Positions 1,396 to 44,200 of a stretch of 64,000 nucleotides of DNA are shown piece by piece. The position numbers and the translations under genes are program-made. The stretch covers positions 514,411-578,410 of the forward strand of contig NW_013657670.1 of NCBI RefSeq assembly GCF_000142905.1, written 5' to 3'. Under the pieces are notes generated by a model. It saw only the letters and a program-made list of their open reading frames with translations, did no database searches and was not told the origin of the DNA. The first letter of the stretch is position 1. Each line of letters begins with the position of its first letter. The stretch comes from Thecamonas trahens ATCC 50062. Lineage: Eukaryota; Protista; Apusomonadida.

Positions 1396-4300
1396 ATGGC
1401 CAAGCACCTCCGGGAGTTCTCACAGCAGGAGGCACTCACCACGCGACTGGCAAACATTCTGGAAGAGTATCCGCTCTCGGTCGGTTCTACCGTTGCGGAA
1501 TGGGCTCAGAATGCGGATGATGCTGGGGCAAGCGTCTTTGGCCTGGTGGTCGACGGACGAACTGCAAGAAACGACCTTCCATTGACGCCATGTGGCGGCG
1601 AAGCGCTGCCAGACATGATCGAGATGGCACGCCGACCGGCGCTGTATGTGTACAACTCGGCCCAGTTTTCAGATGCGGATTTAGAGAACATTATTTCGCT
1701 CGGCAACTCGATGAAGCGCGAGTCGGGCGCCTCTATTGGCAAGTACGGTCTGGGTGCCAACGTCATGTACTCGTTCACTGACACGCCGATGTTCATCTCG
1801 CGCTCATCGCTGGTTGTCTTTGATCCGCATGGCCATCGGCTGCCCGGTGGTATGCTCGGGACTATCACCGACTACATGGCGTGCGGCCTGGCCGAGTCGG
1901 ACCCGGTCCTGGCCTCCGCCTTTGACCTCGAACTGGCTGGCGTGTTCTCAGCCTCGCTCTCGGCCCATTTTGATGGCACCCTCTTCCGGCTCCCGCTGCG
2001 GACACCCGAGGACGCGGCGGCATCGGCAATCTCATCGCACGCGCTCTCCATCGACGATGTTACCAACCTCCTCTCCGACTTTGCGCCGCAGGCCTCGGAC
2101 ATGCTCCTCTTCCTCAAGTCGGTCTCGACCGTCTTTGCCCACGTTCTTACCGACGACGGCCTCACCACGCTCATCACCACCGAAATTGTCGGTCTCGGCC
2201 CAGAGCTCGCGGCCAAGCGGGCGTTGCTCCTGGATGTCGTTGCCGGCGAGCGTCAGGCGCTGCACGCCTCGTTCGAGCTGAGATTTACCGAGTCGTCGGA
2301 CATCCTTGCATCGCGACCGGCGCCGCGGTGGTGGGTCGCGGTTGGCACGCTCGACACACTCGATGCTGACGCCGAGGCTTTGGCCAAGGCTGTGGGCTAC
2401 GTGCCCTGGGCCGGGACAGCGCTACCGCTCCACCAGCTGCCGCCGAACTGGCACGGCCGGGCGTACACCTTTCTTCCCCTGCCGATCACTACCGGCTTTC
2501 CTTTTCACATCAACGGTGCGTTTGCGCTCTCGGCCAATCGGCGCCAGCTCTGGCGCGGCGATGCCGAGCTCTCGGACGCAGCAGCGACAAAGGGCCGGTG
2601 GAACAGCTTTCTCCTCAACACCGTCCTCCCTAGCATTGTCATCCGCGCGTTTGTCGACTCCCAGGCAACGCAACTGGCGCTCGATCCGCTCGCTCACCTC
2701 CCAGTGCTTGCCAGCACACCACCACCGTTTGACGACTTTGCCCATGCGCTCTACACGGCTGTGACTAGCCTCGGGCCAGATGCGCCGGCATTGTTCCCGG
2801 ATCCGCGCTCGCCTGGCAGCTTCGCGCCGCTCCACACGTTTACGCTCATGGACCCCGAGTTTGCGGCAACTGCATCATCGCACATGTTCACTGCGCTCAT
2901 TGCTGCGGATGTGGCACTACTTGCACTTCCGACGCACGTTCAGGACGCGCTCGACGCACTCGACGTTCCGCTGCCGACAACGTCGCCGGCGATGCTGGCG
3001 TCGGCGCTCCGCCGGGTCGTTGCCGTCGATCCCGCGCTTCTTACCCGCGACGTTGCCGTCGCCGCCCTGAACTACGTCCTCTCGGGCGCGAGCGAAGAGA
3101 GCGCGTTGGCGCGACTTGCGTGTCTTGACGGCCTTGCCATTGTCCCACTCCGCGGCGGCGGACTGGGAACTCTGCGCGTCACCAATGCACCGCACGCCCT
3201 TGCTGCGGCAGCCTTACCTTTGGACGAGAAGCGGCGCGAGTCCAAGGCCGAGCGGGCAGCGCGGCGGCGGGCGGCGCGCAAGGCCGAGAAAGCTGAGCGC
3301 AAGGCCAAGGCCAAGGCTGCCAAGCGGCGGGCGCGCGGGCAGGAGCTAGAGGCCCGGCTCGAGTGCGGACTGGAGCCAGCACCAGAGTTGAAGGGCAGCA
3401 TGCCGAGCTTTATGCCAGACACAATTGTCCTCCCGCCCCACCCGCAGTTTCTGGGGCTCATCCCTGACGATGCGGCGTGTCTAGACATGGACTGCCGCGC
3501 AGCGGCTGTGCTCGCGGCTCCAGCGATATTGGCTGTGACCAACATCGTGCCGCTGGGTCTCGAGTACCTCACCCGCTTTGCGCTGCCGCGCTTTCTTGAT
3601 GATGCGTTCCTGGGTATGGGCATGAACGATGCCCTTGTACTCTCCGGCTTTGACGCGGGTTTGCGCCAGCCGTTTGGCCCGCGGTGGCGCAGCCTGCGTC
3701 GTGCTGAACCCCATGCCGCAGCCACGGGGCGCGAGATCCTGAATCTGGCGTGGTCGCTCCTCGCGTCGCTCCAGCTCTCGACGGACGCCATTCGTCGCGC
3801 CTGCGCTGGACTGCCGATGGTGGTCACAGGCCAAGGCGTGGCAATGACGCTTGATGCGGCTGTAGCACACTTTGTGCTTGCACCCGACGAGCTTGACCTA
3901 GCTGGGGAAAGCGCAGCCCTTGCGCGCGACTTTGGCGTCCTCTCGCTCGCCGCAGAATGGGCAGCCGAGGCTGCACTGGCAGCACAGCTTTTGCCGGCAC
4001 ACTGGTACGACGACGGCTTGCTTGCGCTGGCTGTTTGCGTTCCACGCGGAGCATGCATCGACGTTGTAAGTGATGCTGACGCAGCGGCACTCTGCCTGGC
4101 TGCGCGCGACACTATTGCCAACTGGGCCAACGCCGATGCCTCCGTGCTGCATCCGCAGTTGCGTCCTGAAGGTCTGGACCGACTGCCGCTCTTCGAGTCA
4201 CTGGACGGGAGCAGCATGCTGGCGTCGCCTCGTGCAGACCCAATGCGGCCGCTGCCTCTGCCGCGCGGCGAGGGCTGGGCCATTGCGCGCAAAAGTCTTG

Positions 4301-6344
4301 CCGCGCTGGCCGGGCTGCGCATCATCAAGACCGACGGCTCAGCGCGGACCGTGTTGGGCTTGGTCGGAGCGGGCACAGCGGACTTTACGACGTTCATGCG
4401 GCGGGTGCTCTTGCCGCGGCTGCGGAAGCTGCCTCGGGCGGTGATTGAGGAGCATATGAGTGTCGAGCTGGCGGCTGCGATATTCGATGGGCTTGTGCCG
4501 GTCATGGTGTTGCCATGGCAAGGCGACGACGCGGTAATGAGCATGGTCCTTGGGCTCCGCGGCGTCCCGCTCCTGCCATCCTCCTCGGGCTGGCGGACCG
4601 CATCCGAGGTCCACGACCCAGACTCGGAGCTGCTTGCGCGAATCGAGAGAGCCGCCGCTGCCAGCACGGACGGCTCCATCGAGCTTGTCTTTCCGTCACA
4701 TGCCTTCTCCACGCCAGGCGTTCTCACTGTCCTGCGAGCTTTGGGCATGACCGACCTCACGGCGCCCGAGTGCATGTTTGCCGCGGCCCGGGCGGTAGCT
4801 GAGCTCCGCGACGCCGAGCTTGCGCGCGAGTTTGTGGCGAGCGTTGTCCAGCACGCCCGGCAGTGGCCAGTCCACCAGTTGCGTGAGCTCGGCGCGATTG
4901 CTTTTGTACCGGCGTACGACTTGCGTGGCGCCGAGATGGTGCCGACTCACCTACTCCCGTCGCTGCCGTTCAACGCGGTGACCTCGCTCGAGACACAGGC
5001 TTGCTTGGGGTTCCAGGCTCAGAAGTATCGCGTCGATGACTTGGTGTCAGCGCAAGTGTCTCGGCGTCAGCCGAGCGGGGCCCACACCGTGCGATTCGAC
5101 GACGCCCTTGCGCGGGCGCACGAGCAGCTGCGCATGGTGACAGGGAGTACCAGCGCAAGCGAGATACCGAGCGCTGTGGTCACGTTTGTGGCTCCAAACG
5201 AAGCATCGATCCTTGCGATGGACGCTTCGGTCGGCTTCCGCAAGGCGCTGGTACTGCCGGCCGAGCTGGATCGGGCACCGCTGCGCATGCTGTCGGCGTG
5301 GGGAGTGCCGCATCCACCGCCGGCATCTGTGGTGGCGAGCAACCTCACGGATTGCGTGGCGATGTGGGCGGAGAACGGTGTGAGAATGCTTGCGAGCCAC
5401 AACAGACTAGCGGCCCGCAATGCCGAGGCGTATGTGCACGGAACGGTGCTTCTCCATCTGGCGTACTTGGCACGATACCTGGCGGCGATGACAGACATGA
5501 ACTGGGTTGCGGCTCTGGCGCCGGTGCCGTCGGACAAGTTTGGTGTGATCAGAAAGGGCAGCTCTGGCAAGCGGTGGCTCATTTCGCAGCTGCGCGCGCT
5601 GCCGGTGGTGTTTGTCGATGGGGGCTCATCCATACGTCCAAGGTGTACTCGGATCTGGAGCACGATCTCGCAGATGACGTCCGCGCACTACCGAGCTCGT
5701 ACCTGCCGGTCCAGGGCCTGCTGGAAGAGCTTGGCGTCCACAACTTGGACCACGAGCCACTGATCCTACCGCGGGTGACAGCAGAAGCACCAAACACGCT
5801 ACTGGGTCCGATAGTGGCGGCGGCGTTCAACGACGCGCGGCTGGCAGATGTTGTGGTTCGGAGCAGGAGCGGGCGCGAGTGGTTTGCGCACCGGCTGGTG
5901 CTCGGCACGAGCTCGGCGTACTTTGCGTCGGCATTTGAGTCGGGCATGTGTGCAAACGAGGGTGGCGTGATTGCCCTCACGACACCTCACTGGGCGTCAG
6001 ACAGCGCGTACGATGCCATGATGCAGCACATGTACATTGGCGACGGTTGGTTGTCGGCGCTGAAGGAGACGCTTGAGGACGTCATGACTGTGACTGAAGT
6101 CCTGCGGCTTTCGGATGTGTACATGCTGCCGCGGCTGAAGCAGGTGTGTGAACTGTGGCTTGCGAGCGGCGAAGCGGTGGCGATTCTCAACCTCTGCACA
6201 CTGTATGCACTTGCAGATGCAACCAATGCAGTTCAGCTGCAGACAGCCATCGCATACCACATGCGACAGGTCCTCCCCGCGCTGATCAAGACCGACGATT
6301 GGGGTGAGCTGAGTGATGAGCAGCAGAGTCGAATCATGCACTAG
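1396..6344 (+). CDS. Sacsin-like GHKL/HSP90-type ATPase-domain protein with C-terminal BTB/POZ domain (frameshift near 5620)
   Basis: Sacsin repeat motifs FSQQEALTTRLANILEEYP, EWAQNADDA, IGKYGLG and GTLFRLPLRT. Adding one G to the GGGGG at 5620-5624 joins ORF 1396..5763 to ORF 5298..6344, which contains a BTB domain (LADVVV...FAHRLVLGTSSAYFASAFESGM). Confidence 0.8.
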
Positions 6345-27549: not shown

Positions 27550-30500
27550 TTAGTTGCCACGCCCATACACATCGTCATCGTCCGAGTAGTAGTCGTCGTA
27601 GATGTCGGCAGCCATAGCGGCGAGGAGGTGCTGGGCACGAGCACGATCGGCGTCGCTGTCGCCGTTTTCGGCACCCGAGCCAAAGACGGCGTGGCGGCGA
27701 GGGCGCGGGCGGCGGTCATGGCGGCCTTTTGGTCGGCAAGCGCGGCAAAGTACGCGTCCATGCGATCGTTAATGGTCTTGGCGTGGACGGTGAGAAAGTC
27801 GGCCATCGAGGCCGAGCCGGCGCGCTGGAGGCGATCACAGAGGGCTGGGCGGAGGACGCCGGCGATTTTGTGGTCGTTGAGGACGAGGCGCGACTTGATG
27901 ACCTCGAGCATGGTCTTTGTGATGCTTGCGGGCGTGGCAGAGTCGAGCGGTTTGCCCATGCGCTTGAGCGTCTCTTCAACCCGGTCGACGAGCCAGGCGA
28001 CGCGGGCTGGGTCGCCGTCCGACGCATTGCCGCCATCAGCGGCGCATGCGGGTTGGAGCGTTGAGCTGAGGCTCGCAAACTGGGCGAGGATCGGCCCGTC
28101 TGTGGCAGCACGCGGGGCGTTGGCGACAGTGAGGTCGGCAGCAACGTTCGACTGGAGCTCGACAAGCGACTGGTCGAGGACGACGTCAAGCGGCGCGTTG
28201 GCCGGGAGCTCGAGAGCTTCGAGCGCGGCAGTGAGCTCGGCCGGCTTGGGGAGGTCGACGATGCCGCCGGACGAGTCAAAGGCTGATGAGAGCATGGCGC
28301 GGAGGGTGTTGATAGCTGAGAGAGCCGCGAGGCCGAGCGGCTTGGCAAAAGCGACCTTGCAGACCTTGCCTGAGCCGGCGGTGGTCGAGTCGAGCCAGTA
28401 GACCACGCCGACAATGGTGTCGCTCGCCAGGCCGCCAACCACGGCCTGTAGCTCCCAGCCACGGGAAATAGTGGTGAGGAGGATGCCGTCGTAGAGGGGG
28501 AGTGGCTCAAGGAGGGTGCAGCCGGTGGCGCGGAAGATGTCGGCCGAGTTGGTGCCCTGGATGGTGGCGGCGACGGCGCGGGCGGTCTTGGTCGAGGTGT
28601 CGACAAGGGCGTAGCCGGCGAGCGGCGAGCGGAAGTACGGGTAGACTTTGCCGGCGTCGGAGAAGCCGCCCATGGGGGCCCATGTGAGCTGCCAAGGCGA
28701 CATCGGCGGCTGGACGTCGACGGTCTTGGCCTTGCCGAGGACCATGCCAACGACGGAGGCCTTGGACGGGAGCTTCATCCGCCCGCGGCCATTGGCGAGC
28801 TGCAGCATGAGCTGCACCTCGAGCGCGAGCTTGGGCCGGGCATCCAGTTGATCGGCGGGTGGCGTCAGCGGAGCCGGAGGCTCCGGGAAGACCATGGCGT
28901 ACCAGCCCGAGCCGCGGTGGAGGGTAAAGTCGAGCGGAGGTCCATCGCCTTCGGCGACGAGCGCCGATTTGAGGTACGACTCGGAGGCCTCGGGCAGCGA
29001 GTTCCAGATGACGGTGCGCTCTGGCGGGAGGCCGCGGGCGAGGACAGCCGGTGCGATCTTGACGTTTTTGGGCGTCTTTGAGCCGCGGAGGTAGTTGAGC
29101 GGGAACGCGGCGGCGAGGAGGGCCTTGAGACGCGGGTCCGGGGCGACGCGGCCGGCGGCTGAGTTGTGGACGCGGAGCTTGGAGAGCGAGTAGACGGCGG
29201 CGCGGACAGAGCCCTGGGCGGGAAGGAAGGTCATAACCTTTGTGGCGATCTCCTTGACGAGGTTCTCCAGCTGCGAGATGCGCTTCCACGAGACGGCACG
29301 TGCGCGGCAAAAGCGGGCGAGTGCGGAGCGCTCGGTGCCGGGGCGGGCCTTGGCGCGCTTGGCGAGCCAGGAGCGGAAGAGGCGAAGGACAGCGATGGGC
29401 TCCGAGTAGGCGCCGGCATCGTACTTTGCGCGGTCGAGGAGCGATTCGTGCATGCGTGCGCGGAACTCGGCGAGCGACTTGAGGAAGAACGGCGAGGGGA
29501 GCGAGAAGACGTCCTGGATGGTGAGTGCGGCAGCCATGATGATGCCGTCGACCGGGAGGCCAAAGGTGACGCCGAGAAAGACGAGGCGGGCGTACTTCAG
29601 GTCGACCGGGAGGGCCATGGCCATGTGGCCGAGGATGGTGATCTCGGCGTCTTCGGCGCGCGAGCGCATGGCGCCCCAGGCATCGAGCTCCTCCAGGGCG
29701 CGGACGACACGTGACTCTGCGGGCGGGGTGATGATCTTGGCGAGGACGTCCTTGACAGAGCCGAGGCCGAGCTGGCGGATGCGGAGGACTAAGCGCTCGA
29801 GCGGCATGCGCTCGATGTCGGGCTTGCCGTACTCGGGCATGTAGTCTTCAAAGAAGAACTTGGGGTACATGCGGACAACAGTGCCGGGCGAGAGGCGGCC
29901 AGCGCGGCCGGAGCGTTGCTTGGCCGACGACTTTGCAGCCCATGAGCGGAGGAGGCAGGTCATGTTGGACTTGGGATCGTACTGGACCACCTTTTCGAGG
30001 CCGTAGTCGAGGACGGCGGTGAGGCCCGGGACGGTGATGGATGACTCGGCGATGTTGGTGGCGAGGACGACGTTGGTGGCGTCGAGCGGCGGGGCGTTGA
30101 AGGCGGCCTCCTGCTCGGCGCGCGGGATGGAGGAGTGAAGGACGACGAGGTTAAGAAGCGGCTTGGACTCGCGTCCGACGGTGCCCGAGTGGGTGAGCGC
30201 CGAGTAGACGTTGGCGTTCTGCTCAAACATGTCGTACAGCTCGGTGATAGCGCCGAGGCCGGGCAGAAAGATGAGAACGGCGGCGCCGGGCTCGGCGAGC
30301 GCCTCGACGACGCCGACGCCCGCGCGGAGGAGCGGGACAAGGACCTCGGGCTTGGCGAGGAGCGGCGGGACGCGAGCGTGGGAGACGTACGCTGGAGCGG
30401 CGGCCGGGCCAGGCTGGGCGAGAGTGGCAAAGGCAGCCTTGTCGGGCAGCGTCGCGCCAAACGACTTGCAGAAGGTCTTCAGGCCCTGGAAGAGCGAGGC

Positions 30501-33473
30501 ACGGGTAGCTTCATCGACCTCGACCTCGAAGAACGCGTCGTGTGGATCAAAGTCGGGCGCGGAGGCCGGAGCGACCGCGTCGCCGTCGCCATCCTCGTGG
30601 ACGACGATGGCACGCTCGACGTCGGCGAGATCGCAAATGGTGTCTAGGTAGACAACGCGCGAGGGGAAGCGGTGGACGCCGACAAAGACCTTGGGCGGGC
30701 GAGCGTCTGCCACCACGACGCGCTCGGTGGCGCCGGTCTCGGCGTTGGTTGTCTCGATGGGACGCATAAAGTAGTCGACAAAGACCTTGACGTCCATGGT
30801 GGCGGACATGAGGATGAGCTTGACACCGTACTGGCGGAGGTGGAGCTTGAGGACAAGCGTGAGGAGGTCCATGTCCAGGTCACGCTCGTGGACCTCGTCG
30901 AGGACGACGTGGGTGTAGTCTGCCAGCGCGTCCGGGTGGTGGACAAGGAGGGCGAGGAGGTAGCCGGTGGTGACAAAGGTGAGCGCAGTACGGCCGCGGG
31001 CGGCGGCGTGCTCGCCACCGATGCGGTAGCCGACTTCTGCGCCGAGGCGCGAGCCGCGCATGTTGGCGACGTGACGGGCGAGCGAGACGGCGGCGAGGCG
31101 GCGCGGCTGGGTGACGATGATACGGGCTTCCGGGTGGGCGTCGAGGATAAACTGCGGGACCATGGTCGACTTGCCGCACCCGGTCTCGCCCTCGATGCAC
31201 ACGATCTGCTGGGAGTCGATGAGCTGGACAATGTGGTCGCGATGTGCCGAGACCGGAAGGCCCTCGCCCATGGCCTTGAGCTGGGCGAGCTCGTCTACCG
31301 ACGGCGGCGCGGCGGCGGCGCGGGCAGCGGCCTCCGAGGCGGCGGCGGCGGCGGCGGTGGCGGCGGCCTCGACGGACTCGGCGTAGTAGTCGAGCGTCGG
31401 CTGCGCGAGGCCGGTGAGTGCGGTTTGGAAGACGTCGCGGAGCTCGGGGCATTCCATAGCCTCGGCGGCGTCAAAGCCTTCGGCGGCGAGTGCGGCGTAG
31501 AAAGCGAGCGTGGAGAGGACAGACGAGGGGCGGGGGAACGATGCCGTTGGAAGGCCGATGAGACGGGCGAGAGCCTTGACGTACTTGTAGACGAGCTGAA
31601 GCCAGGCAAAGATAGAGACCGCGCGGAGGGCTGGGCGGTCAGCGCCGGGCGTGAGGCCCTCCTCAGCCTCGAGCGCAGCGAGGTAGCTGGCGGCGCGAGA
31701 CGACGACGAGCGGGCGGCGACCATGGCAGTAGCGATGCGAGCGAGCTCGTCCATCGAGAGGCCGACGCGTGAGCCGAGAACAGCGATGACGCGAACGAGA
31801 GTGGTAAAGTAGTAGCCGGAGAGGACTTGCGGCTCGTCCGTGGTCGGCGGGACCTGGCGGGTGCCCTGCGAGGTGGCGACGGCAATAAAGTACTCAAAGA
31901 AAGCGGCCGAGAGGTCAAACGAGATGCGCGGGGCGCGGACAAGAGCGAGGAGCGGGCCGTCGAGAGCGGCGTGTGGGATGCCGGCGGCGGTGAGCGGAGC
32001 AAAGAAGGTCTGCGAAAAGTGCGAGGCAATGACCGACCAGCGCTCGCGCGCAACCATGCGGACGTTATCACCGATGCGGACAAACTCGGCGACGGCCGGC
32101 AGGCCGCACCAGCCGCCGAGGACGATCTCGTAAAATACCAGCCGGAGCGGGGCGACGAGGTCGGTGGCGGAGAGCTGCGAGGCCTGCAGCGTCTCCAGAG
32201 GAAGCGAGCACCAGGCCTCGCCACGGAGGGCGACGGTGCGGGCCCACGAAGGGACAGTGCCGGCGGCGAGTGCGTCGAGGACGGCAGGCGGGACGCCGGA
32301 AATACCGGTGGCAACAGTGGTGACGGCAGCATCCTGCTCGGGCGAGGCCTGCGGCTGGACGTACGAGGTGACCGACGAGCCGTAGAATGAGCGGGCGTAG
32401 GTGATGGCGCGGCAGACGTCGCCGTCACGATGCATGAGGTCGACCAAAACAGGCGCAGCCTCGAGCTGCGGCGACGGGAGCGCCATGAGCCAGCCCGAAG
32501 CCTCGGCCGGCGCAACCCATGTCCGCTTCTCGGAGCGGTGGTAGTCTTTGAGTCCAAGCATGCCCGGCAAGTTGTAGCGGTGGACAAAGTGCGAGGAAAA
32601 GTCGTCGCCAAGGACGATGGCGACCTCGATGAGGGCGTCGACCGAGTCGCCGAGGCCAAGGCTGCGGGCGACGCGGATCGGCTCGATGAGCCAGCCCTCG
32701 AGAGGCAAGCTGGGATCAGCCACCGCCGCCGCCAAGTTGAGCCAGGGCAGCGGGAGGTAGCGAATGGGCCCCGCCATGACGGCAAAGTCAGTGTCAAAGC
32801 CGAGGATGGCAGCGACGGCGCCGGGCGCGGCGGCCTCGGCCGTCCGCATGACATCGGCCATGATCGGATCGGCCTCGCCGTCGCAGCTCACAATAGTGAC
32901 GTGGTCCATGCCCGCCAGCGCTTCGAGCGCCTCCTCCTTCATCAGCGGCGGCTTTGTCCACGGCAGGCCGATGGGCGAGGAGTAGCCTGCCAGGGCGGCC
33001 ATGGCCGCGGCCATGTCGGCAATGCCCTCGTTCATCCGCGAGATCCATGCGTTCCGCTTGGCAACAACGCCGTTTGTTGACGACAGCGAGCCGCGATCAG
33101 CACCCGTGGCACCGGCCGCACCTGCAGCGGCGGCAGCCTTGAGCGATGACGCCGAGGCCGAGCCCCGAGATCCGTCCATGTACAGCTCGACATCAAAGCC
33201 ACGACGAGTAAGAGCATCAAGGGCATGTGTGAGCGCAGGGCCAACGATGGCATAATCAACGCCAAGGAGAGCCAAGTACTTGAGACCGCCAGCATCGGCA
33301 CGTTCTCGCAGAGCGCCTTGCACGACATGGAAGATGAAGCCAAGTCCGTCGACCAGGAGTCGTGGACGATGGCTTGCATCATCACTCGCGTCCGTCGCCA
33401 CCTCGGCCTTCCACTCTACAGCCACGGTGCTTTGTTTCTCTTGCAGGTATGTCCATAGTCCGCGAATGCCCAT
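27550..33473 (-). CDS. Asteroid/ASTE1-like PIN (XPG/FEN1-type) nuclease fused to a Spindle-E/TDRD9-like DEAH-box RNA helicase
   Basis: N-terminal MGIRGL, LLVDG, YMDG, GEAD, DTDF and GDDF nuclease motifs. Helicase motifs GETGCGKST, TQPRRLAA, DEVHERD, MSAT, ATNIAESSIT and QRSGRAGR. The true C-terminus is probably ...YSDDDDVYGRGN* (stop 27550) after a 1-nt loss near 27727-27730. Confidence 0.85.
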
Positions 33474-36369: not shown

Positions 36370-38226
36370 ATGGACCAAGCGGGAGCAAGAGGCAGCACGC
36401 ATGACAAGAGCACGGTCGTGGTAGAGGCGGCAGTACCAGCAGAGGACCAGGACCAGGACCAGGGCCACAACCAGAGCCTCTCGCTGTCGCACCGGCAGCT
36501 GGCCCAGCTGCCCGAGTTGAGCCATGTGGCGGCGAGCCTGACCTCGTTGGACCTCTCCTACAACTCGCTCACATCGCTGCAAGGACTTGATTGCCTGGCA
36601 TCGCTGACATGGCTGGACGGATCCCACAATGCGCTGACGGAGATGCCTCTGTTGCCATTGGCATCGGGATTGACAGCCCTCAACTACGCACACAACTATC
36701 TTGCTCATGTGGCAGCTTTGGACGCGCTGCCGGCGTTGGCCATGTTGGATCTCTCCCACAATCTCATCGCTTCGCTCCCGGCACTCCGGCCTCTCTCGCT
36801 CAACACGGCACTCACTCATCTCGACATCAGAGACAATCCCGTGACGCACTCGCGTCGCGGTCTTCGTTTCCACATCCTCAACTGGCTCCCCTCGCTCTCG
36901 CATCTCAACGGCTCGAGGACTCGCGCCGCTATCCACACTCGCGCCCATGAGGCTGCAGTGGCACAGCGGCTCCAATCCTCGCCAACACCGTCACGTCGCA
37001 CGGCCCGATCTCTCCGCTCGGCGCGCCCGGCTTTACGCCCGTGCCGCGACAGTGCGCTGGAGGAGCTGGATGCGCTGCTGGCTGTCGAGGGTGTCGATCC
37101 GCGGGAGCTTCTCGACTCGCTGAGGGGTAGCCCCGCAGGCAAATCGCTGTCATCGGCGTCGTTGCCGTTGCCGTCGCCATCGCCACGCCCGCGACGTGCT
37201 CGCGCAGGCGCTGCCGCTCGGGCGCGGGCGAGAGTTTCGTCGACGCCTCGGCGGGCGCGCCAGGCGGCGACTCCGCGGCTGCGGTCGGAGCCGCGGCCGC
37301 GACCAGCCCGCGAGCGCGTCACTGCCAGCCACGCGAGTCCGTCGCGGCGGTCGCTCCGCGGAAGGAGCAAGGCTCGCAACCGGCCGCTTTCGGAGCGCAA
37401 GGCCCGGATTGCGGCGTACGACGCGGCGCGACGGGCCGGACTGGGGGCGTCGCCGGGAGGGATGGGCGGCGGCGGCCCCACCGGCGACTCGCCGCTCCGC
37501 GCCAGCGAGCTCCGGACGTCGGTCCAGGACCGGCTCGACGCACTCTCGCGTGAGCTAGAGGCGTCGTCCTCGGCTCGAAAGTCGCGGCAGGCCAAGCTCC
37601 GGCACGAGCTCGAGCGCGAGGCTGACCACTTGGCAGTCGTCGAGTCAGCGCTTGCGGCAAACGCGCCGATTCCGGCGGGCGGAGCCCGGCACTTTGGCGA
37701 AGGAGACGACGACGGTGTCTCGTCGGCACTGCTCGGCGCGTTCCTCTTTTACATCGACGAGCTCTGGTTTACAGCCCGCCTTGCCGTGGTGGTCCTCATC
37801 CGGCTCGGCGGGGCGCTGCCGGCGGCGCTGCGCGCAGTTGTGCGGTCGGGCCGGTTGACCCGGCCGTGCGACCCGCCGGCGGCGCTGCGCGGACACTGGG
37901 GCTCGCCGGGCGCGCTCCGCAAGTGGCCGAAACTCAAGGCGGCGCAGACGGCGTGGATGGAGACGCAGTACACACGGACTATGTTCCACACGCTGTACGG
38001 ATACGCCGAGGCTGGCGCGACCAAGCCGTTCCTGACATACGCGGCCTCGCTGCTGCAGGCCGGCACGCTCACTGCGGACCGGGCGCCGGACGAGGGCTCG
38101 GACCCGTTGTTCGCCACCACCGATGAGGGCCTAGGCCTGCTCGAGGAGGAAGAGTACACGCGGTCGCTGTTGTGGTACATTGTCGAAAGCGGACGCGCGG
38201 CAACATCCGAGTCTATCGGCGCTTGA
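36370..38226 (+). CDS. SDS22-like leucine-rich repeat protein
   Basis: About 5-6 LxxLxLSxNxL repeats and an LRR cap (NPV...LPSLSHLNG), then basic low-complexity and coiled-coil regions. Confidence 0.8.
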   Translation: MDQAGARGSTHDKSTVVVEAAVPAEDQDQDQGHNQSLSLSHRQLAQLPELSHVAASLTSLDLSYNSLTSLQGLDCLASLTWLDGSHNALTEMPLLPLASGLTALNYAHNYLAHVAALDALPALAMLDLSHNLIASLPALRPLSLNTALTHLDIRDNPVTHSRRGLRFHILNWLPSLSHLNGSRTRAAIHTRAHEAAVAQRLQSSPTPSRRTARSLRSARPALRPCRDSALEELDALLAVEGVDPRELLDSLRGSPAGKSLSSASLPLPSPSPRPRRARAGAAARARARVSSTPRRARQAATPRLRSEPRPRPARERVTASHASPSRRSLRGRSKARNRPLSERKARIAAYDAARRAGLGASPGGMGGGGPTGDSPLRASELRTSVQDRLDALSRELEASSSARKSRQAKLRHELEREADHLAVVESALAANAPIPAGGARHFGEGDDDGVSSALLGAFLFYIDELWFTARLAVVVLIRLGGALPAALRAVVRSGRLTRPCDPPAALRGHWGSPGALRKWPKLKAAQTAWMETQYTRTMFHTLYGYAEAGATKPFLTYAASLLQAGTLTADRAPDEGSDPLFATTDEGLGLLEEEEYTRSLLWYIVESGRAATSESIGA

Positions 38227-41200
38227 ACCGCTTACTCGGCTCGTGCCGCACATCGTCGCGCCCGCGCCGGCGCTTGCCGCGGTTGCGTGGACGGCCTCGG
38301 CCTCGTCCTCGGCCTTGACCTCGGCGGGCAGGCGGCCGCTGCGGCTGCAGCGGCTGCAGTGGCGGCGGGCCGGGCGGCGGGCCGGGCGGCGGGCCGGGCG
38401 GCGGGCCGGGCGGCGGGCCGGGCGGGAGCGGCGGGCGAACGTACGGCTGTTGGTAGGCCTGATGGGAGCGGTAGGCTTCCGACGCAGACGATGATGCCGG
38501 TGGCGGTGGCGGCTGCGACCGCATTGGCGGGTGTTGCGGCATGGTCATGCGATGGGGATGGCGGACGTGGAGAGACGAGCGCCCGGCGACGATGGCCCTG
38601 CTGGTGTGGACCCGCATCGAGTCGGCTGGCGCAGAGCGGAGCGAGCTGCAGAGGGCGGCGGCGAGGTCGGTCGAGTTGCAGACGAGACCGCGCGAGGCGG
38701 CGTCGTTGAGGAGCTCGTTCCAAGCGAGGTCGTTGCGGAGAGAGGCGACGTTGCAGACCACAATGTGGACGAGGCGGGCTCGGGTAAGGGCGACGTTCAT
38801 GCGACGGACGTCGGCGAGGAAGCCGACCGAGGTGGAGGAGGCGCGGACGGTGGAGAGGAGGACAATGTCTGCCTCGCGGCCCTGGAACGAGTCGACGGTG
38901 CAGACCGGGACGACGATGCCGGCACGGCGGAGGTGGTGCTCGAGCTCGCGTGCCTGGCCGCGGTACGGGGTGATGACAGCGATGCGGAGAGAGATGCGGC
39001 AGCGGGAAAGGCGGTTGTGGATTTCGACGGCGAGGGCGACAACGGCGGCGGCCTCGGCTGGATTGACTGTCGACCGCCCGCGGCGGTTGTGCTCGCGCGA
39101 GTGCGGCACGTTGACTACCATGTACGGCGAGAGGTTGGCGGCGGTGTAGACCGGGTGCGGGTCGAGGGTGGCGGCGGCAACCGAGACACCCTCCATCAGC
39201 TGCGAGTCGTAGAAAAAGTGCGAGGGGAACTGGCGGATCTCCGGGTGGAAACGGTACTGGGTCTGCAGCGTGATGGCAAAGACGCCAGCGTCCTTGAGTC
39301 GGGTAAACAGCGGCGCGTGGTAGTTGGCCTGCTCGGCGACCTTGGAGAGGACTGTGGCTGGCAACTGGCACGGGTCGCCGACGAGCCAGAGCGTGTCGGC
39401 ACCGCGGGCGAGCGGGATGAGGGTCGACGGCTCGACCGCCTGCGCGGCCTCGTCGATGACCACGTACGGGAAGTTGAGCTTGGAGAGGATGGAGAGCGCG
39501 GACGACGAGAGGGTGCAAAGGACCACGTCGGCAACCTCGAGAATGCGCTGCTCGACGGCGTTGACGCGCGTGTTGAGCGAGCGCTGAAGGTCGGCAATCT
39601 CGTGAGAGACCCGCTCGCGCTCAGTGTCGATGCGGGAGAAGCGGGCGGCGGAGCCGGCGCCGCGCGAGGCGGCGGCGGCGGCGGTGACGACCACGGATTC
39701 TTGTTGGAGGGCGACGAGCTTATCGCGGAGTGAGTTGAGGCGGGCGGTGATGGCGGCGTGGGTGGACTTGACTCGGTTTGCGTGGGCTCGGACGAGGGCA
39801 TCGAGCGAGTACGCGTTTGCGGTCTTGCTGGTTCCGCGCGAGGCGCTGCCGACGCGGACGATGCACGGGCGGACGGTGGCGGCGCGGACGGCGGCAGTGA
39901 CGGCGGCGGCGCCGCCGGGGCCGTTCAGCACCTCGTCCATGTTGTCGAGCGGAACGGACCAGTCGATGAGGCCGTGCGTAGCGATGCGGGTGATGAGCTC
40001 GTCGACGGCACCGTTTGACGGCGCGCAGACGAGGAGCGGGTACGACCCGCCCTCGCGCGAGAAGCGCATCGAGGTTGAGCCGTGCGGAAAGAGAGCCTCA
40101 ACCATCGGCTGCAGCATGACATTAGTGGTCGAGCCCGGCGAGGCAGTCGCGGCTGGCAGCGACTCAACACCCATGATGTTGAGATGGCTATTGGCGAGGC
40201 GGGAGGTGCGCGAGACCGACTTACCCAGGCCGCGCCGGCCTCCGCCACCCGACTTGGAGAAGATCCGCGAGCGAAGAAGAAGCGAGAGGCCGCCGAGAAT
40301 GGTGGAAGACTTGCCGGTGCCTGGTGGGCCGTGGAGAAGGTGGATGCCGCGGAGGTGTGTTGCGGCGTGGAGCGCCTCGCACTGCTTGTCGTTGAGGGCG
40401 CAGCGCATGAAACGCAGGCGTGGGAGGGCAAACGCGTCGCCGAGGCTCGGCGCGGTGCTGTCGATCCAGCGCGCGAGCATGTCTTGCGGCTTTGGATTCG
40501 GGTGGATGATGTTGGGTCGGAGGCCAATGGACGAGAGATTGGCAATGGCGGTGCACTCGCGGCGAGCGGTGATGAGCGAGACGACTCGCGTGACAAAGAC
40601 GTTGCGCTTAGCCAGGCCGCGGACAAACTCGAGCCGGTTCGAGTTACGACTGAGGCTGTAGCTGATGGTGTACATGCCGTCGTTGGTCTGGCCCCTGGTG
40701 ATGGCGAGGACGTGTGGATTGTCCTTCGCGAGGCTCGCCTTGGTGTGAACCACAACAAGCGACTGGTTGCGAAAGGTGTCGGCGGCGATGTCTGTCGCGC
40801 TGCGGACGGCAAGGCGCATTGTGCCCGACGACGGTGACGTCGGATTGAGGTCAAGGACGCGGGCTCCAATTGACGACGGAAAGCCGTCGTCGCGGGCAGA
40901 CTCGATGGCAGCGCAGGTCTCGGCGAGCACCATGGGAAAAAAGATGTTGCCGTACGAAGTGACGCTGTTAAACTTCTTGGGCACCGACTTGAGAAGCTCG
41001 CGCCAGTACGAGTTGCCCGGGAGGACAAACAAGTTCCATCCGAGGACAACGGCATCAAACTGGCCGAGAAAGTCGGGCGTCCGGGTTGTCGGCGCGCCAG
41101 ACGCATGCGACGGCCGCCGAGTCGACTTGATCTCAATCGGTCCTGACGACGATGATGACGACGTTCCGGCCGTCGACGACCGTGGCGGTGGCACAAATTG

Positions 41201-44200
41201 CGAGGTCCGTGCCACAGCCTGCCCACGGCCGCCGGCTCGCGGCCTTGTCGAAGCCCGCACCTGTTCCGGCGGCAGTTCGGAGAACGAGAGCTGCTTTGTC
41301 GCCTTCCGCTGTTTGGGCAGAGTTACGTCCTTGACTGCCTCGATGACCTCGGGCAAGTCCCATGCGTTGATGCGCTTGGCAGGACGAGCCTCGGGTTGTG
41401 TTGTCGCGACGGGAGGCGCGTGAGCCGGTGCGGGGGCTGGCGTCGTTTTGGATCGAGGTGGGCGGTAAAGTGGCAGCGCCGAGATGGGAACATCATCGTC
41501 GTCGTCATTGTCATTGCCGCCGTCGTCTTCAGCAGGTGGAGCAACGTCGTTGGAGCCGTTGTCAAGCGCAGAGGTGGCGGAACCACCGCCATCGTCTTCA
41601 TCGCCCCCGCTACTCCTGTTGTCGTTGTCGGAGGCCGTCGACTCGTCGCTCGAGCCAGCCTCGATCATGGCAGCGCGAGCGACAATGGCACTGTGACGCT
41701 CGGCTGAAGAGAGGGCGGCGTCGCGAGGGACAGCGCGGAGGGTGACCACCTCGAGGTCGTGGTCGGTGAGGCCGATACCCTGGTCCTCGGGCAGGGCAGC
41801 GCAGGCGGGGCCCGAAAGGGCGCTGCCCTCGCCGGTGACGCTGCGGACGGCAGAAAAGGATGGCAGTGCGTTGTCGAGCGCGGCGTTGTCGGCTGTAGAG
41901 TTGGCGCGGCGCAGAAGGTTGGCAAGCCGCTTGGCGGCGCGCGGGTCGGCGGCGGTGACGATGGCGACGACCCGCTCCGGGAGCGGTGGCCTGTGTTGAA
42001 CGAGGCAGTCCAGGATGAGGTCCTTGACGGCGCGCCAGAGCGGGCGCAGCCGAATGTGGGTCTCGACAACCGGCTTCCACGCCAAAAGCGAGCAAAGAAC
42101 GACCGGCAGCGAAACGAGAAAGGCGGGCGGCGGCGCTGGCATCGAGGTGAGGCGCCTGCAGATGGGATGAAGACACTGGAAAAAGACAAGCACCTGTGGC
42201 TCGAGATGAATCGAGCTGGGGCGCTCGTGGTCAATGGCGGCCGACGCGAGAACCGAGGCGGCAAGCTGCCAAACGGCGACAATGCCGGCGTCGTTGACGT
42301 CTGTGTGGGCTGATGTGAGGGTGGTAAAGGCATGCCGGTAGACTGAAAAGTGGATGGCATGGGTGCGGATGACGGTAGCGAGGTGAGCCCAGCCAGCAGA
42401 GAGCGCGTCACGGAGTTGATGGTCGGCAGCGGCCCGGTGGAGTGTCGCAGCAGCAGCAGCAGGATCAGTAGCGCCGCCAGAGAGGCGGAGCGCGGTGGCA
42501 CGGATGCCGGCGTGGCGCGAGACGAGGAGGAAGGGCATGGCGCGGGCAAGCGACGGCGAGGTGAGGACGGCGAATCGGCCCGAGGCATCGTTGACGGGCA
42601 TGCGACTGAGGAGGCTCTCCATGTACTGGGTAGCCGAGTTGAAGGCGTCGGCGAGAGCGAGGTCGCTCTTGTCAGGCGGGAGCGCAATGACGGCGAGTGG
42701 CGCAAGAGCGAGGATCATGCTGCCGTGCATGTGCGACGGCGGCTGGACGGGACAGTCTGGCGACCAAGGAAAGAGAGCGCTGGAGTGTGCGGTACGACCG
42801 GGCGGCGGGGTGGCGAGCTCACAGCTTCGCCACGGTAGCTCCGCAAGAGCAGTGGCGGCCGCGGCAAGATGTGCAAGCTCGCACCGGAGGGCAGCAGTGA
42901 GGAGCGAGAGTGCATCGGGCGGGCAAATAGTGAGCGGCACGATGGTGGTCGGCTCAGTGCCGGCCACCGCGTGCCAGGCAGCAAAGGCGAGCTTCTTGTC
43001 GATGTCGCTCCATCCCCGGAGTGGCTCGAGACGTGGCGAGTCGTATGTAGTGCATACAATAAAGACTGCGGTAGACGCCGCAGCGTCGGCGAGATGGCGG
43101 CGATGGCGGTGCGAAGCAGGCGAGGCAAAGTCAAAGAGGAGGCGAACAAGGTGGGCGAGGAAGCATGTGATGGGCGAGGGAGCGGAGAGCGCCGAGCTGG
43201 AGGTCTCGACCCGCGACGACCACACAATCCACTGGGCAACAACCGAGTCGCGGCCAACGCCTGCGAGCGAGAGCACAACAAGGCGAAGAGCGTCGATGAG
43301 TTCGAGCGATGGAGCAATGTCGAGGTACGCGGCAAAGGTGGTTGGATCGAGCACGTCCTGCGACTCCCAGAACGCGGCGCGGAGGTGGTCGAGGAAAATG
43401 ACAACGAGCCGGAGGAGGCGCGAGCGCGAGCGGCGGTCGGCGTCGCCACCGTGGCCGGTCGCGCCCTTGACCAGAGGCAGTACGTTCGCCTGGAAGAGCT
43501 CGGCGAGGCGCGGAACTAGGCGCGGGAGCAGGACGGAGAGGACGCCGATGGCAGCGGTGGAGCAGGCTTCGAGGAGGACAACAAGCGCGTCGTAGAGGAC
43601 GTCGTGGGCGAGCGCCGGACGGAACGAGCGCGGCAGGTTCGAGTCGAGCGGGACCGACGGGGTGACGGGGTCGAGGAGCGCGAGAATGTATTCGAGGACC
43701 GGCGCGAGGCTGGCGGCGTCGAGCGAGGTGACAGACTCGTTTGCCTTGGCCTCACCCGGGGTGACAACGTGAAAGTCGGCGAGGAGGTCCTTGACCATGG
43801 CCCGCAGCTCGGCGTGGGCAGCGGTGAGAAGGAGGATGAGCCCGGTGAGCGGGACGTGGAGCAGCGGGCCGAGGCGGAGTGCGTTCCGCTGGACAGCGGC
43901 CAGGTCCGAGACAGCCGAGCTGCTTGCGGCATCCCAGGTCTGCGGCGGGTGAACCATGATGGGAAAGCTGCGCCAGCGACGGAGCATGTGGCTTGCCTGC
44001 GGCGTGGCCTGCAGCGTGGCTGTCACCGCCACCACCATCCGCGGCGAGGCATCGAGCAGGGCGGGCGATTGAGGACGGCAAAGAGATGGGCGTCGCTGAG
44101 AACGACCTTGCTGGCGTTATCCGGCACGCTTTTCCGCAGCCGGGCACAGTGCATGGCATCAAAGGCATCGTCGTAGTCGGCACGGTGCATGGCTGTGTAG

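What the first reader, a model, noticed from the sequence alone, without database searches (positions are those of the whole stretch)
27550..33473. Asteroid/ASTE1-type nuclease fused to a Spindle-E/TDRD9-like RNA helicase: candidate one-protein unwinding and cleavage effector
Seen in sequence: one uninterrupted ORF has an XPG/FEN1-type PIN domain with the acidic active-site positions apparently intact (VDG, MDG, GEAD, DTD, GDD). It then has Asteroid-like helical motifs (LRLVFYEIVLG..VAEFVR; VSIFAWLQLVY..LARLIGLP), an Ala-rich linker, and a DEAH helicase. The helicase signatures (YTHVVLDEVHERDLDMD, SWAAKSSAKQRSGRAGR, LGHMAMALPVD..RLVFLG, AAFPLNY, PERTV) recall TDRD9/Spn-E more than generic DHX helicases. 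No Tudor domain is evident. Established: Spn-E/TDRD9 acts in animal piRNA transposon silencing, and ASTE1 is a structure-specific nuclease. I know of no described fusion of the two. Inference: a coupled unwind-and-cut machine for RNA or RNA:DNA hybrids, possibly anti-transposon or antiviral, in a non-animal protist.
Basis: partly seen in the sequence, partly recalled or inferred. Interest (0 to 1): 0.85.

Follow-up and report, generated by a model that had tools for sequence, protein, structure and literature searches.

The report
Asteroid-type nuclease fused to Spindle-E-like helicase
One gene of the protist Thecamonas trahens joins an apparently active Asteroid/FEN-type 5' nuclease to a Spindle-E-like RNA helicase, and the same unstudied fusion occurs in sponges, oomycetes, a malawimonad, a kinetoplastid and a picozoan, so it looks like an old eukaryotic unwind-and-cut enzyme whose function nobody has tested.

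Summary
Window 27550-33473 (-) is Thecamonas trahens AMSG_02901, an uninterrupted reading frame across the linker.

- **Nuclease module (aa 1-700):** No Pfam or PDB hit by single sequence. A family profile hits FEN1 and EXO1. An AlphaFold model (pLDDT 81) matches Asteroid/ASTE1 models over about 580 residues (TM 0.72/0.84). All seven FEN-type acidic residues and the arch Lys/Arg pair are conserved.
- **Helicase (aa 736-1500):** A complete DExH helicase. Its best solved and named relatives are Spindle-E/TDRD9.
- **Not a TDRD9 orthologue:** It has no Tudor domain. It sits in a separate, well supported clade, and an AU test rejects joining it to TDRD9. No Piwi domain was found in this genome.
- **Not unique:** At least 14 other proteins carry the same fusion, from Sycon, Ephydatia, Albugo, Gefionella, Papus, Picomonas and unnamed samples. 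In two of them a single exon spans the junction.
- **Literature:** I found no paper on this architecture.

Best reading: an ATP-driven 3'-to-5' helicase that hands the displaced 5' end to its own 5' nuclease, probably on RNA. This mechanism is inferred, not shown. A paralogous Asteroid-like module in this genome is fused to a poly(A) polymerase. I class it as a new variant of a known kind (helicase-nuclease fusions), of moderate to high interest.

The parts
27550..33473 (-). Whole gene AMSG_02901 as deposited (1963 aa). The read-through ORF would run on to 27180.
32484..33473 (-). aa 1-330: FEN/XPG-type PIN 5'-nuclease domain. It starts MGIRGL and carries acidic D42, D100, E200, D202, D227, D229, D291 and arch K139/R146. 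A low-complexity Ala/Gly/Ser insert lies at about aa 101-131.
   Evidence: The family profile hits FEN-1 (2.6e-10) and EXO1 (4e-9). Foldseek gives EXO1/FEN1/XPG with probability 1.0. VIA-align gives FEN1 Z 14.1 and EXO1 Z 13.8.
31374..32483 (-). aa 331-700: helical C-terminal half of the Asteroid/FAM120/Mkt1-class module. It includes the conserved PLR..Y..L / V.E..R and RPS.R / FP.P motifs.
   Evidence: The AF2 model scores pLDDT 80.8 and pTM 0.85. The whole 1-719 aligns to Asteroid clusters at TM 0.72/0.84 over 575 aa, to ASTE1 at 0.71/0.73, to FAM120B at 0.70/0.67 and to MKT1 at 0.66/0.62.
31269..31373 (-). aa 701-735: Ala-rich linker, in frame with no stop.
   Evidence: Contigs of unknown library kind lie collinear across it (X1 30086-31660, X2 30607-31550).
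29844..31268 (-). aa 736-1210: DExH helicase core (RecA1 and RecA2) with motifs I, Ia, II (DEVH), III (SAT), V and VI all present. About 100 aa are inserted between the two lobes.
   Evidence: Pfam DEAD 3.1e-9 and Helicase_C 2.1e-9. The PDB search gives Spindle-E 282 bits, against DHX29 234, DHX9 230 and DHX36 221.
28794..29843 (-). aa 1211-1560: winged-helix / ratchet (HA2-like) region and a possible OB region of the DEAH/RHA type. It is divergent.
   Evidence: The alignment to the Spindle-E chain runs to query aa about 1414, and family alignments reach about aa 1500. Pfam HA2 and OB models do not hit.
27688..28793 (-). aa 1561-1929: C-terminal region with no recognisable family.
   Evidence: No match among the collected relatives. 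No Atlas feature hit. No Pfam hit.
27656..27687 (-). 32-nt GT..AG piece removed in the deposited gene model. It could be a very short intron or compensation for a frameshift; this is unverified.
27550..27655 (-). Last exon of the deposited model: an acidic Tyr/Asp tail and the TAA stop at 27550-27552.

Best explanation
AMSG_02901 is a single polypeptide with two enzyme modules.

(i) The N-terminal ~700 residues form a 5'-nuclease module of the Rad2/XPG superfamily. It has the Asteroid/ASTE1-FAM120-Mkt1 architecture, meaning a FEN-like PIN domain followed by a long helical half, and its metal-binding and arch residues are intact.

(ii) After an Ala-rich linker comes a complete DExH (DEAH/RHA-type) helicase. 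This helicase belongs to a pan-eukaryotic clade whose nearest named relatives are Spindle-E/TDRD9, but it is a paralogous lineage, not TDRD9 itself.

Shown here: the fusion, the fold assignments, the conservation of catalytic residues, the clade, and the wide distribution of the same architecture.

Inferred mechanism: DEAH/RHA helicases load on a 3' single-stranded tail and move 3'-to-5'. That movement peels off the 5' end of the opposite strand. A 5' end or 5' flap is exactly what FEN/EXO1/XRN-type nucleases thread through their helical arch. The protein would therefore unwind a duplex with ATP and degrade or clip the displaced strand from its 5' end.

The substrate is most likely RNA or an RNA-containing duplex, which points to RNA surveillance or decay. 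The reasons are that the helicase lineage is an RNA-helicase lineage and that the only other Asteroid-like module in this genome is fused to a poly(A) polymerase. It does not work through a Piwi partner in this organism.
For: One gene:
- An uninterrupted 2097-codon frame, identical to the deposited single-exon model across the junction.
- The same N-module and the start of the helicase (GETGxGKS) lie within one exon or ORF in two unrelated samples: P0019 on L003, with a GT..AG intron only later, and P0016.
- Full-length transcript ORFs carry both halves in Gefionella (P0026), Sycon (P0025) and Papus (P0116).

Nuclease:
- The family profile hits FEN-1 at 2.6e-10, EXO1 at 4e-9, and Rad2/XPG and GEN1.
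- Fold matches: FEN1 Z 14.1, EXO1 Z 13.8, GEN1 12.4, XPG 12.3, XRN1 8.2.
- The whole module matches Asteroid models at TM 0.72/0.84.
- D42, D100, E200, D202, D227, D229 and D291 are each kept in 26-31 of the 28-31 filled rows. K139 and R146 are conserved 7 residues apart, the spacing recalled for FEN1 K93/R100.

Helicase:
- All motifs are present.
- The best solved relative is Spindle-E at 282 bits.
- All top named hits are Spn-E/TDRD9.
- It scores 278-518 bits against about 118 Spn-E-like proteins but only 252 bits against Thecamonas's own DHX57/29-like paralogue.
- The tree separates it from seven Thecamonas DEAH paralogues at 99% SH-aLRT.

RNA leaning:
- A paralogous module on contig C54 is fused to PAP_NTPase and PAP_central (hhalign probability 97.8%).
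- Mkt1, FAM120A and lepidopteran Asteroid-type nucleases are linked to RNA in the literature (PMC12345631, PMC7026591, PMC7598268).
Against: - No activity, substrate or polarity has been measured for any member of this fusion family.
- By the account in PMC12345631, ASTE1 itself is reported to have nuclease activity and to act in DNA repair. DNA or R-loop substrates are therefore not excluded.
- The Thecamonas N-module alone matches no Pfam model and no PDB sequence. The assignment rests on a 16-32-row family alignment and a predicted structure.
- The Ephydatia-like copies have lost two acidic residues (D229 to V/I, D291 to S), so nuclease activity is dispensable in at least one lineage.
- No RNA-seq run was available to show one transcript in Thecamonas.
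- How the two modules sit relative to each other was not modelled.
Confidence: 0.6

Rival explanations
1. The Asteroid-like module is not a working nuclease here. It would be an RNA- or protein-binding platform, as proposed for Mkt1 and FAM120A, that targets or regulates the helicase. The protein would then be an RNP remodeller or translation/decay regulator without cleavage of its own.
For: The fold is about equally close to FAM120B (TM 0.70/0.67) and MKT1 (0.66/0.62), which are known as post-transcriptional regulators (PMC12345631, PMC3985637). The sponge copies P0030, P0031 and P0037 have lost D229 and D291 yet keep the module.
Against: All seven acidic residues and the arch K/R are kept in Thecamonas and in nearly all other members. 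The N-terminal MG.xGL that forms part of the 5'-nuclease active site is at the very start of the ORF.
Confidence: 0.2
2. It is a DNA-repair or replication enzyme. ASTE1-like processing of DNA ends or flaps would be coupled to a helicase acting on R-loops, G-quadruplexes or DNA, as DHX9 and DHX36 can.
For: PMC12345631 summarises ASTE1 and FAM120B as nucleases acting in DNA repair. The closest solved folds (FEN1, EXO1, GEN1, XPG) are DNA enzymes. Some DEAH/RHA helicases unwind DNA structures (general knowledge).
Against: The nearest helicase relatives (Spn-E/TDRD9) are RNA-pathway proteins (PMC11094040). The paralogous module in this genome is fused to a poly(A) polymerase, an RNA enzyme. XRN1, an RNA 5' exonuclease, shares the fold.
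Confidence: 0.15
3. It is a piRNA-like, small-RNA-guided anti-transposon effector, working as Spn-E/TDRD9 does with Piwi proteins.
For: The helicase's closest characterised relatives are Spn-E/TDRD9. S. pombe Mkt1 is needed for RNAi-mediated silencing (PMC7026591).
Against: No Piwi-domain match was found in the 28.7-Mb genome although the control genomes matched. No PAZ match was found either, but that control was silent, so the result is weak. Only one RNase III match was found, in a 340-aa frame. There is no Tudor domain. The helicase lies outside the Tudor-bearing TDRD9 clade (p-AU 7.8e-6).
Confidence: 0.04
4. It is an annotation or assembly artefact: two neighbouring genes that merely share a frame in a G+C-rich genome.
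For: No RNA evidence exists for Thecamonas. G+C-rich DNA gives long spurious ORFs, up to 519 aa here. The 3' end of the model already needs an odd 32-nt intron.
Against: At least 14 proteins from six named distant lineages and several unnamed samples have the same order of domains. In P0016 and P0019 one exon encodes both the module and helicase motif I. There is no stop and no plausible internal start context at the linker.
Confidence: 0.03

Closest known systems
ASTE1 / Asteroid (Mkt1-ASTE1-FAM120 class of the Rad2/XPG family; PMC12345631, PMC5499597)
   Same: A FEN-like PIN domain followed by a long helical C-terminal half, about 600-700 aa in all. Predicted structures superpose over 575-581 residues (TM 0.71-0.84). 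The acidic active-site residues are retained.
   Different: The sequence does not reach Pfam XPG_I_2 or XPG_I thresholds. Here the module is covalently joined to a helicase, whereas ASTE1, FAM120 and Mkt1 are stand-alone proteins. Substrate and activity are untested.
Spindle-E / TDRD9 (animal piRNA-pathway DExH helicase; PMC11094040, PMC4232550)
   Same: It is the best solved relative (9nhs_G, 282 bits) and the best named relative. It has the same DExH motifs and the same divergent HA2-like region.
   Different: There is no Tudor domain. It lies in a separate clade (99-100% SH-aLRT), and the AU test rejects a joint clade. Animals such as sponges, Glandiceps and Owenia have members of this clade alongside the Tudor-bearing TDRD9 clade that other animals in the tree carry, so the two are paralogues. 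No Piwi was found in Thecamonas.
FEN1 / EXO1 / XPG / GEN1 / XRN1 5' nucleases
   Same: The catalytic PIN-like fold (Z 8-14), seven acidic residues, the arch Lys/Arg pair and the N-terminal MG..GL.
   Different: Only the first ~330-400 residues correspond. The helical half and the helicase are absent from these enzymes.
Other helicase-nuclease fusion enzymes: Dna2, WRN, Dicer, HELZ2, bacterial PhoH2 (PIN + PhoH RNA helicase; PMC5499597)
   Same: The same logic: one polypeptide couples ATP-driven strand separation to cleavage. PhoH2 also pairs a PIN-like nuclease with an RNA helicase.
   Different: The nuclease and helicase families differ. None of these joins a FEN/Asteroid-type module to a DEAH/RHA helicase.

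Membership tests
Rad2/XPG (FEN-like PIN) 5'-nuclease superfamily | Sequence relationship to FEN1/EXO1/XPG N and I regions | tested here: met
   The profile of family alignment A1 hits FEN-1 at 2.6e-10, EXO1 at 4e-9, Rad2 at 4e-6 and GEN1 at 0.01. The single Thecamonas sequence alone gives no Pfam or PDB hit.
Rad2/XPG (FEN-like PIN) 5'-nuclease superfamily | Seven metal-binding acidic residues and the helical-arch Lys/Arg | tested here: met
   D42, D100, E200, D202, D227, D229, D291, K139 and R146 are present and conserved in the family. The correspondence to FEN1 D34/D86/E158/E160/D179/D181/D233 and K93/R100 is from my own knowledge of FEN1 plus the alignment.
Rad2/XPG (FEN-like PIN) 5'-nuclease superfamily | PIN-like fold with helical arch | tested here: met
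   The AF2 model scores pLDDT 80.8. FEN1 Z 14.1 and EXO1 Z 13.8. Foldseek probability 1.0.
Rad2/XPG (FEN-like PIN) 5'-nuclease superfamily | Metal-dependent nuclease activity | not testable with these tools
   Needs biochemistry.
Asteroid/ASTE1 (Mkt1-ASTE1-FAM120 class) | PIN-like domain plus long helical C-terminal half, as a whole-module fold | tested here: met
   Atlas shape search: Asteroid clusters TM 0.72/0.84 (575 aa), ASTE1 0.71/0.73 (581 aa), FAM120B 0.70/0.67, MKT1 0.66/0.62. Atlas feature search: Asteroid_N/FAM120A/XPG_I_2 clusters at 0.96.
Asteroid/ASTE1 (Mkt1-ASTE1-FAM120 class) | Match to Pfam XPG_I_2 (PF12813) above the curated cut-off | tested here: not met
   No hit for the Thecamonas module. 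The genome-wide PF12813 search hits only an EXO1-like and an XPG_N+XPG_I gene. Seven of 16 family members hit, all below the cut-off. The newer Asteroid_N model was not hit, and I could not confirm it is in the local library.
Asteroid/ASTE1 (Mkt1-ASTE1-FAM120 class) | Orthology to animal ASTE1 by phylogeny | not tested
   No bona fide ASTE1 sequence could be obtained through the tools. The alignment-based search returned nothing.
TDRD9 / Spindle-E | DExH helicase core most similar to Spn-E | tested here: met
TDRD9 / Spindle-E | C-terminal (extended) Tudor domain | tested here: not met
   No TUDOR hit in the protein. The genome's Tudor matches lie on other contigs, C68 and C93.
TDRD9 / Spindle-E | Placement inside the TDRD9 orthologue clade | tested here: not met
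   The Tudor-bearing clade has 100% support. The query lies in a different clade with 99-100% support. Forcing query plus TDRD9 together costs 122 lnL units, p-AU 7.8e-6. The group was named after the tree was seen.
TDRD9 / Spindle-E | Piwi-clade partner in the same genome | tested here: not met
   PF02171 gives no match while the controls matched. A six-frame search of a draft genome does not prove absence.
DEAH/RHA helicases | Motifs I, Ia, II (DExH), III, V and VI | tested here: met
   Read directly from the translation. Pfam DEAD and Helicase_C hit.
DEAH/RHA helicases | WH-ratchet (HA2) and OB C-terminal domains | tested here: inconclusive
   The Pfam HA2_N, HA2_C and OB_NTP_bind models do not hit. 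The alignment to Spindle-E, DHX29 and DHX37 chains does continue about 200 residues past RecA2.

The most novel reading that the evidence does not exclude
The Asteroid-module + Spn-E-like-helicase fusion may be an ancient, possibly LECA-age, eukaryotic RNA unwind-and-degrade enzyme and the ancestral state of its helicase clade. It is found in Obazoa, malawimonads, Discoba, Picozoa and stramenopiles.

Read as a 'Rosetta stone', it predicts that the stand-alone Mkt1/ASTE1/FAM120-class proteins and Spn-E/TDRD9-type helicases of animals and fungi work together physically. Together with the poly(A)-polymerase fusion in the same genome, that would define a previously unrecognised RNA-processing role for Asteroid-type nucleases.
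Probability: 0.25. Interest if true: 0.8.

Novelty: new variant of a known kind. Interest (0 to 1): 0.62.

Why it matters
The Asteroid/ASTE1, FAM120 and Mkt1 proteins are a poorly understood branch of the XPG nuclease family. Spindle-E/TDRD9 is a helicase whose molecular action in piRNA biogenesis is still unclear.

A conserved natural fusion of the two module types gives a concrete hypothesis that can be tested at the bench. It occurs in lineages spanning most eukaryotic supergroups, including an organism in which no Piwi domain was found. The hypothesis is that the helicase exposes a 5' end for the nuclease.

It also suggests the Spn-E-like helicase lineage is older than the Piwi pathway and independent of it. 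The family is large, about 2000-3600 aa per protein, it is annotated only as 'uncharacterized' or 'spindle-E-like', and I found no published study of it.

Tried and rejected
- Pfam on aa 1-740 gave no family even at E 0.1.
- phmmer of the N-module against PDB sequences gave nothing.
- Single-sequence AlphaFold was useless, with pLDDT 40. It was replaced by the alignment-based model.
- The word-based homologue search restricted to long proteins found only the protein itself for the N-module.
- The same tool with alignment A1 returned nothing at all, so that search was wasted.
- The exhaustive phmmer gave only 19 weak relatives, the best at 4e-12. The fusion partners appeared only after I built an HMM from those relatives.
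- A reciprocal-best-hit test with Branchiostoma TDRD9 was not clean. The slowly evolving DHX57/29-like paralogue on C42 scores slightly higher in summed bits than this gene. I therefore used a tree instead.
- The AU test on the 63-row PMSF tree did not finish in two 300-s runs. I repeated it on 34 rows with LG+G4.
- RNA evidence: no run on record as RNA. Four small runs of unknown kind gave only collinear contigs with no joints, which says nothing about transcripts.
- The C-terminal 440-650 residues have no relative among the collected proteins, no Atlas hit and no Pfam hit.
- The contig look-up for P0008 found nothing.
- I did not send a complex-prediction job, because the report does not claim a specific docking of the two modules.
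- Outgroups for DHX9, DHX30, DHX36 and YTHDC2 from other species could not be fetched. Only Thecamonas paralogues and PDB bit scores stand in for them.
Full report
**What is there.** The window comes from Thecamonas trahens ATCC 50062, an apusomonad. On the minus strand an ORF runs from the ATG at 33473 to 27180, 2097 codons. Its first 1929 residues are identical to the deposited protein AMSG_02901, which is 1963 aa and annotated 'uncharacterized'. The deposited model then removes a 32-nt GT..AG piece (27656-27687). It ends with an acidic Tyr/Asp tail and a TAA at 27550-27552. Other frames of this 66% G+C stretch give ORFs of at most 519 aa, so a 2097-codon frame with homologues for both halves is not chance.

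**The N-terminal 700 residues.**
- Taken alone they match no Pfam model, even at E 0.1, and no PDB sequence. A single-sequence AlphaFold model was worthless, with pLDDT 40.
- An exhaustive phmmer search of 1.8 billion representatives found 19 weak relatives, the best at 4e-12.
- Aligning these (A1) gave a profile that hits FEN-1 (2.6e-10), EXO1 (4e-9), Rad2/XPG and GEN1 among solved structures.
- With a 32-row alignment (A2) AlphaFold gave a confident model, pLDDT 80.8 and pTM 0.85.
- The first ~400 residues of that model superpose on FEN1 (Z 14.1), EXO1 (13.8), GEN1 (12.4), XPG (12.3), T5 exonuclease (9.9) and XRN1 (8.2).
- The whole 1-719 superposes on predicted structures of 'Asteroid domain-containing protein' (TM 0.72 by query, 0.84 by target, 575 residues) and 'protein asteroid homolog 1' (0.71/0.73). 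FAM120B (0.70/0.67) and MKT1 (0.66/0.62) follow closely.
- These proteins are exactly the group that Caballero et al. (PMC12345631) proposed as a class within the Rad2/XPG family.

The seven acidic positions (D42, D100, E200, D202, D227, D229, D291) are conserved in almost every row. So is a Lys/Arg pair seven residues apart in the arch (K139, R146), the spacing I recall for FEN1 K93/R100. The Ephydatia-like sponge copies are the exception: they have lost D229 and D291. By sequence the module is a distinct subfamily that does not pass Pfam's XPG_I_2 model.

**The helicase.**
- Residues 736-1210 carry all DExH motifs: GETGCGKST 762-770, DEVH 859-862, SAT 890-892, TNIAESSITV 1139-1148 and QRSGRAGR 1186-1193.
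- Among solved structures the best match is Spindle-E (9nhs_G, 282 bits), ahead of DHX29 (234), DHX9 (230) and DHX36 (221).
- Among long proteins in the 5.8-billion-sequence set, every named top hit is Spn-E/TDRD9 or 'spn-E-like'.
- The protein scores 278-518 bits against about 118 such proteins, but only 252 bits against Thecamonas's own DHX57/29-like paralogue on contig C42. That paralogue has RWD and DSRM_DHX29 domains, and its own best PDB hits are DHX36 and DHX29.
- In a maximum-likelihood tree of 63 rows, the Spn-E-like sequences separate from seven Thecamonas DEAH paralogues at 99% SH-aLRT.
- Within the Spn-E-like group, the Tudor-bearing TDRD9/Spn-E orthologues form one clade (100%). 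Our protein lies in another clade of 39 rows (99%; 100% in the 34-row tree).
- Forcing our protein together with the TDRD9 clade costs 122 log-likelihood units, p-AU 7.8e-6.
- The two clades, together with two ciliate proteins (P0083, P0115) and two unnamed ones (P0095, P0101), form an unresolved polytomy.

In short, the helicase is 'Spn-E-like' as its nearest characterised kin, but it is a paralogous lineage. Sponges, a hemichordate and an annelid have members of this clade. The Tudor-bearing TDRD9 sequences in the tree come from other animals.

**The fusion is not unique.**
- An HMM of the N-module found the same module at the N-terminus of 14 of the long Spn-E-like helicases.
- The named sources are Sycon ciliatum and Ephydatia muelleri (sponges), Albugo laibachii and A. 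candida (oomycetes), Gefionella okellyi (malawimonad), Papus ankaliazontas (prokinetoplastid) and Picomonas judraskeda (Picozoa). Several further proteins come from unnamed ENA, Logan and JGI samples.
- All of them fall in the same helicase clade as the Thecamonas protein.
- In two further samples a single exon or ORF encodes the module and the start of the helicase (P0016, P0019). In locus L003 the first intron comes only after helicase motif Ib, and the next exon continues with DEVH.
- Several carriers are transcript-derived complete ORFs.

This is strong indirect evidence that the Thecamonas frame is one gene. Direct RNA evidence was not available. No RNA run is on record, and four small runs of unknown kind give only collinear contigs, two of which cross the linker.

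Stand-alone versions also exist. Tubulanus LOC141908708 is a 634-aa gene with unrelated neighbours. Some clade members lack the module: Glandiceps, Owenia, apicomplexans and dinoflagellates.

**Context in the genome.**
- No Piwi domain was found, with positive controls.
- No PAZ match was found, but that control was silent.
- There is one RNase III match, in a 340-aa frame.
- Tudor domains occur only on other contigs.
- A profile search for the N-module finds exactly one paralogue, on contig C54. There the module (aa 188-667 of a 1550-aa frame, hhalign probability 97.8%) is fused to canonical poly(A)-polymerase domains. This confirms an earlier scan note (s1-742075).

Both Asteroid-like modules of this organism are thus welded to RNA enzymes. 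That tips the substrate question towards RNA.

**How it probably works (inference).** DEAH/RHA helicases bind a 3' single-stranded tail and move 3'-to-5'. On a 3'-tailed duplex the first thing displaced is the 5' end of the other strand. FEN/EXO1/XRN-type nucleases thread 5' ends or 5' flaps through their helical arch. A protein carrying both would unwind with ATP and clip or degrade the displaced strand from its 5' end. I put about 0.6 on this overall picture, including RNA or RNA-containing substrates. The rivals are:
- a non-catalytic, Mkt1/FAM120-like adaptor role (0.2);
- a DNA-repair role like that reported for ASTE1 (0.15);
- a Piwi-type silencing role (0.04);
- a gene-model artefact (0.03).

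**Novelty.** Helicase-nuclease fusions are a known kind: Dna2, WRN, Dicer, HELZ2 and bacterial PIN-PhoH2. I found no paper on this particular architecture. Database entries call the members 'uncharacterized', 'putative RNA helicase' or 'spindle-E'. I class it as a new variant of a known kind. Its interest lies in its age and breadth, and in the functional link it suggests between Asteroid/FAM120/Mkt1-class proteins and Spn-E-type helicases.

**Limits.**
- The outgroup set lacks DHX9, DHX30, DHX36 and YTHDC2 from other species.
- The trees are 'quick' IQ-TREE searches with SH-aLRT support only.
- Some carriers are transcriptomes of predators or single-cell assemblies, where contamination is possible.
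- The AU group was named after the tree was seen.

Noticed in passing
G000 contig C54, locus L024:2352-7001 (-), not in the window: A 1550-aa open frame has a paralogous Asteroid-like nuclease module (aa 188-667, acidic residues largely kept) fused to canonical poly(A)-polymerase domains (PAP_NTPase, PAP_central). Apart from the window's own gene, it is the only match to the module profile in this genome.
   Followed up: partly
window 27656-27687 (-): The deposited gene model removes a 32-nt GT..AG piece to reach an acidic Tyr/Asp tail. Such a short intron is unusual and could instead mask a frameshift. Without it the frame reads on to 27180 and overlaps the next small ORF.
   Followed up: partly
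   Followed up: partly
window 38213-44038 (-): A 1941-aa ORF with AAA_11 and AAA_12 domains, i.e. an SF1 helicase of the UPF1/senataxin type, lies 5 kb from the nuclease-helicase gene.
   Followed up: no
window 1396-5763 (+): A 1455-aa ORF with an N-terminal Sacsin domain (PF25794, 2.6e-53).
   Followed up: no
L003:12623-20686 (+) and the 2287-aa product of the gene called upstream at the start of L003 (unnamed eukaryote, ENA ERZ25068762): The animal-type homologues are giants of about 3400-3700 aa. After the helicase they carry repeated Egalitarian-type winged-helix domains (WH_Egal, 3.5e-14). A second helicase gene with a faint WH_Egal match lies just upstream, so it may be a tandem paralogue.
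   Followed up: no
Proteins P0030, P0031, P0037 (Ephydatia-like sponge copies): These fusion proteins have replaced two of the seven acidic nuclease residues (D229 to V/I, D291 to S) while keeping the module. This suggests a lineage in which the nuclease has become inactive.
   Followed up: partly
Protein P0039 (Calypogeia fissa, 3343 aa): A liverwort member of the same helicase clade carries SF1 helicase domains (AAA_11/AAA_12) and a 3'-5' exonuclease domain (PF01612) in its precomputed Pfam list. This is a different nuclease-helicase combination.
   Followed up: no
G000 contig C42, locus L013:3631-8457 (-): Thecamonas has a 1609-aa DHX57/DHX29-like helicase with RWD and DSRM_DHX29 domains. 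It evolves slowly and out-scores the window's gene in a search with animal TDRD9, which is a trap for reciprocal-best-hit orthology calls.
   Followed up: yes
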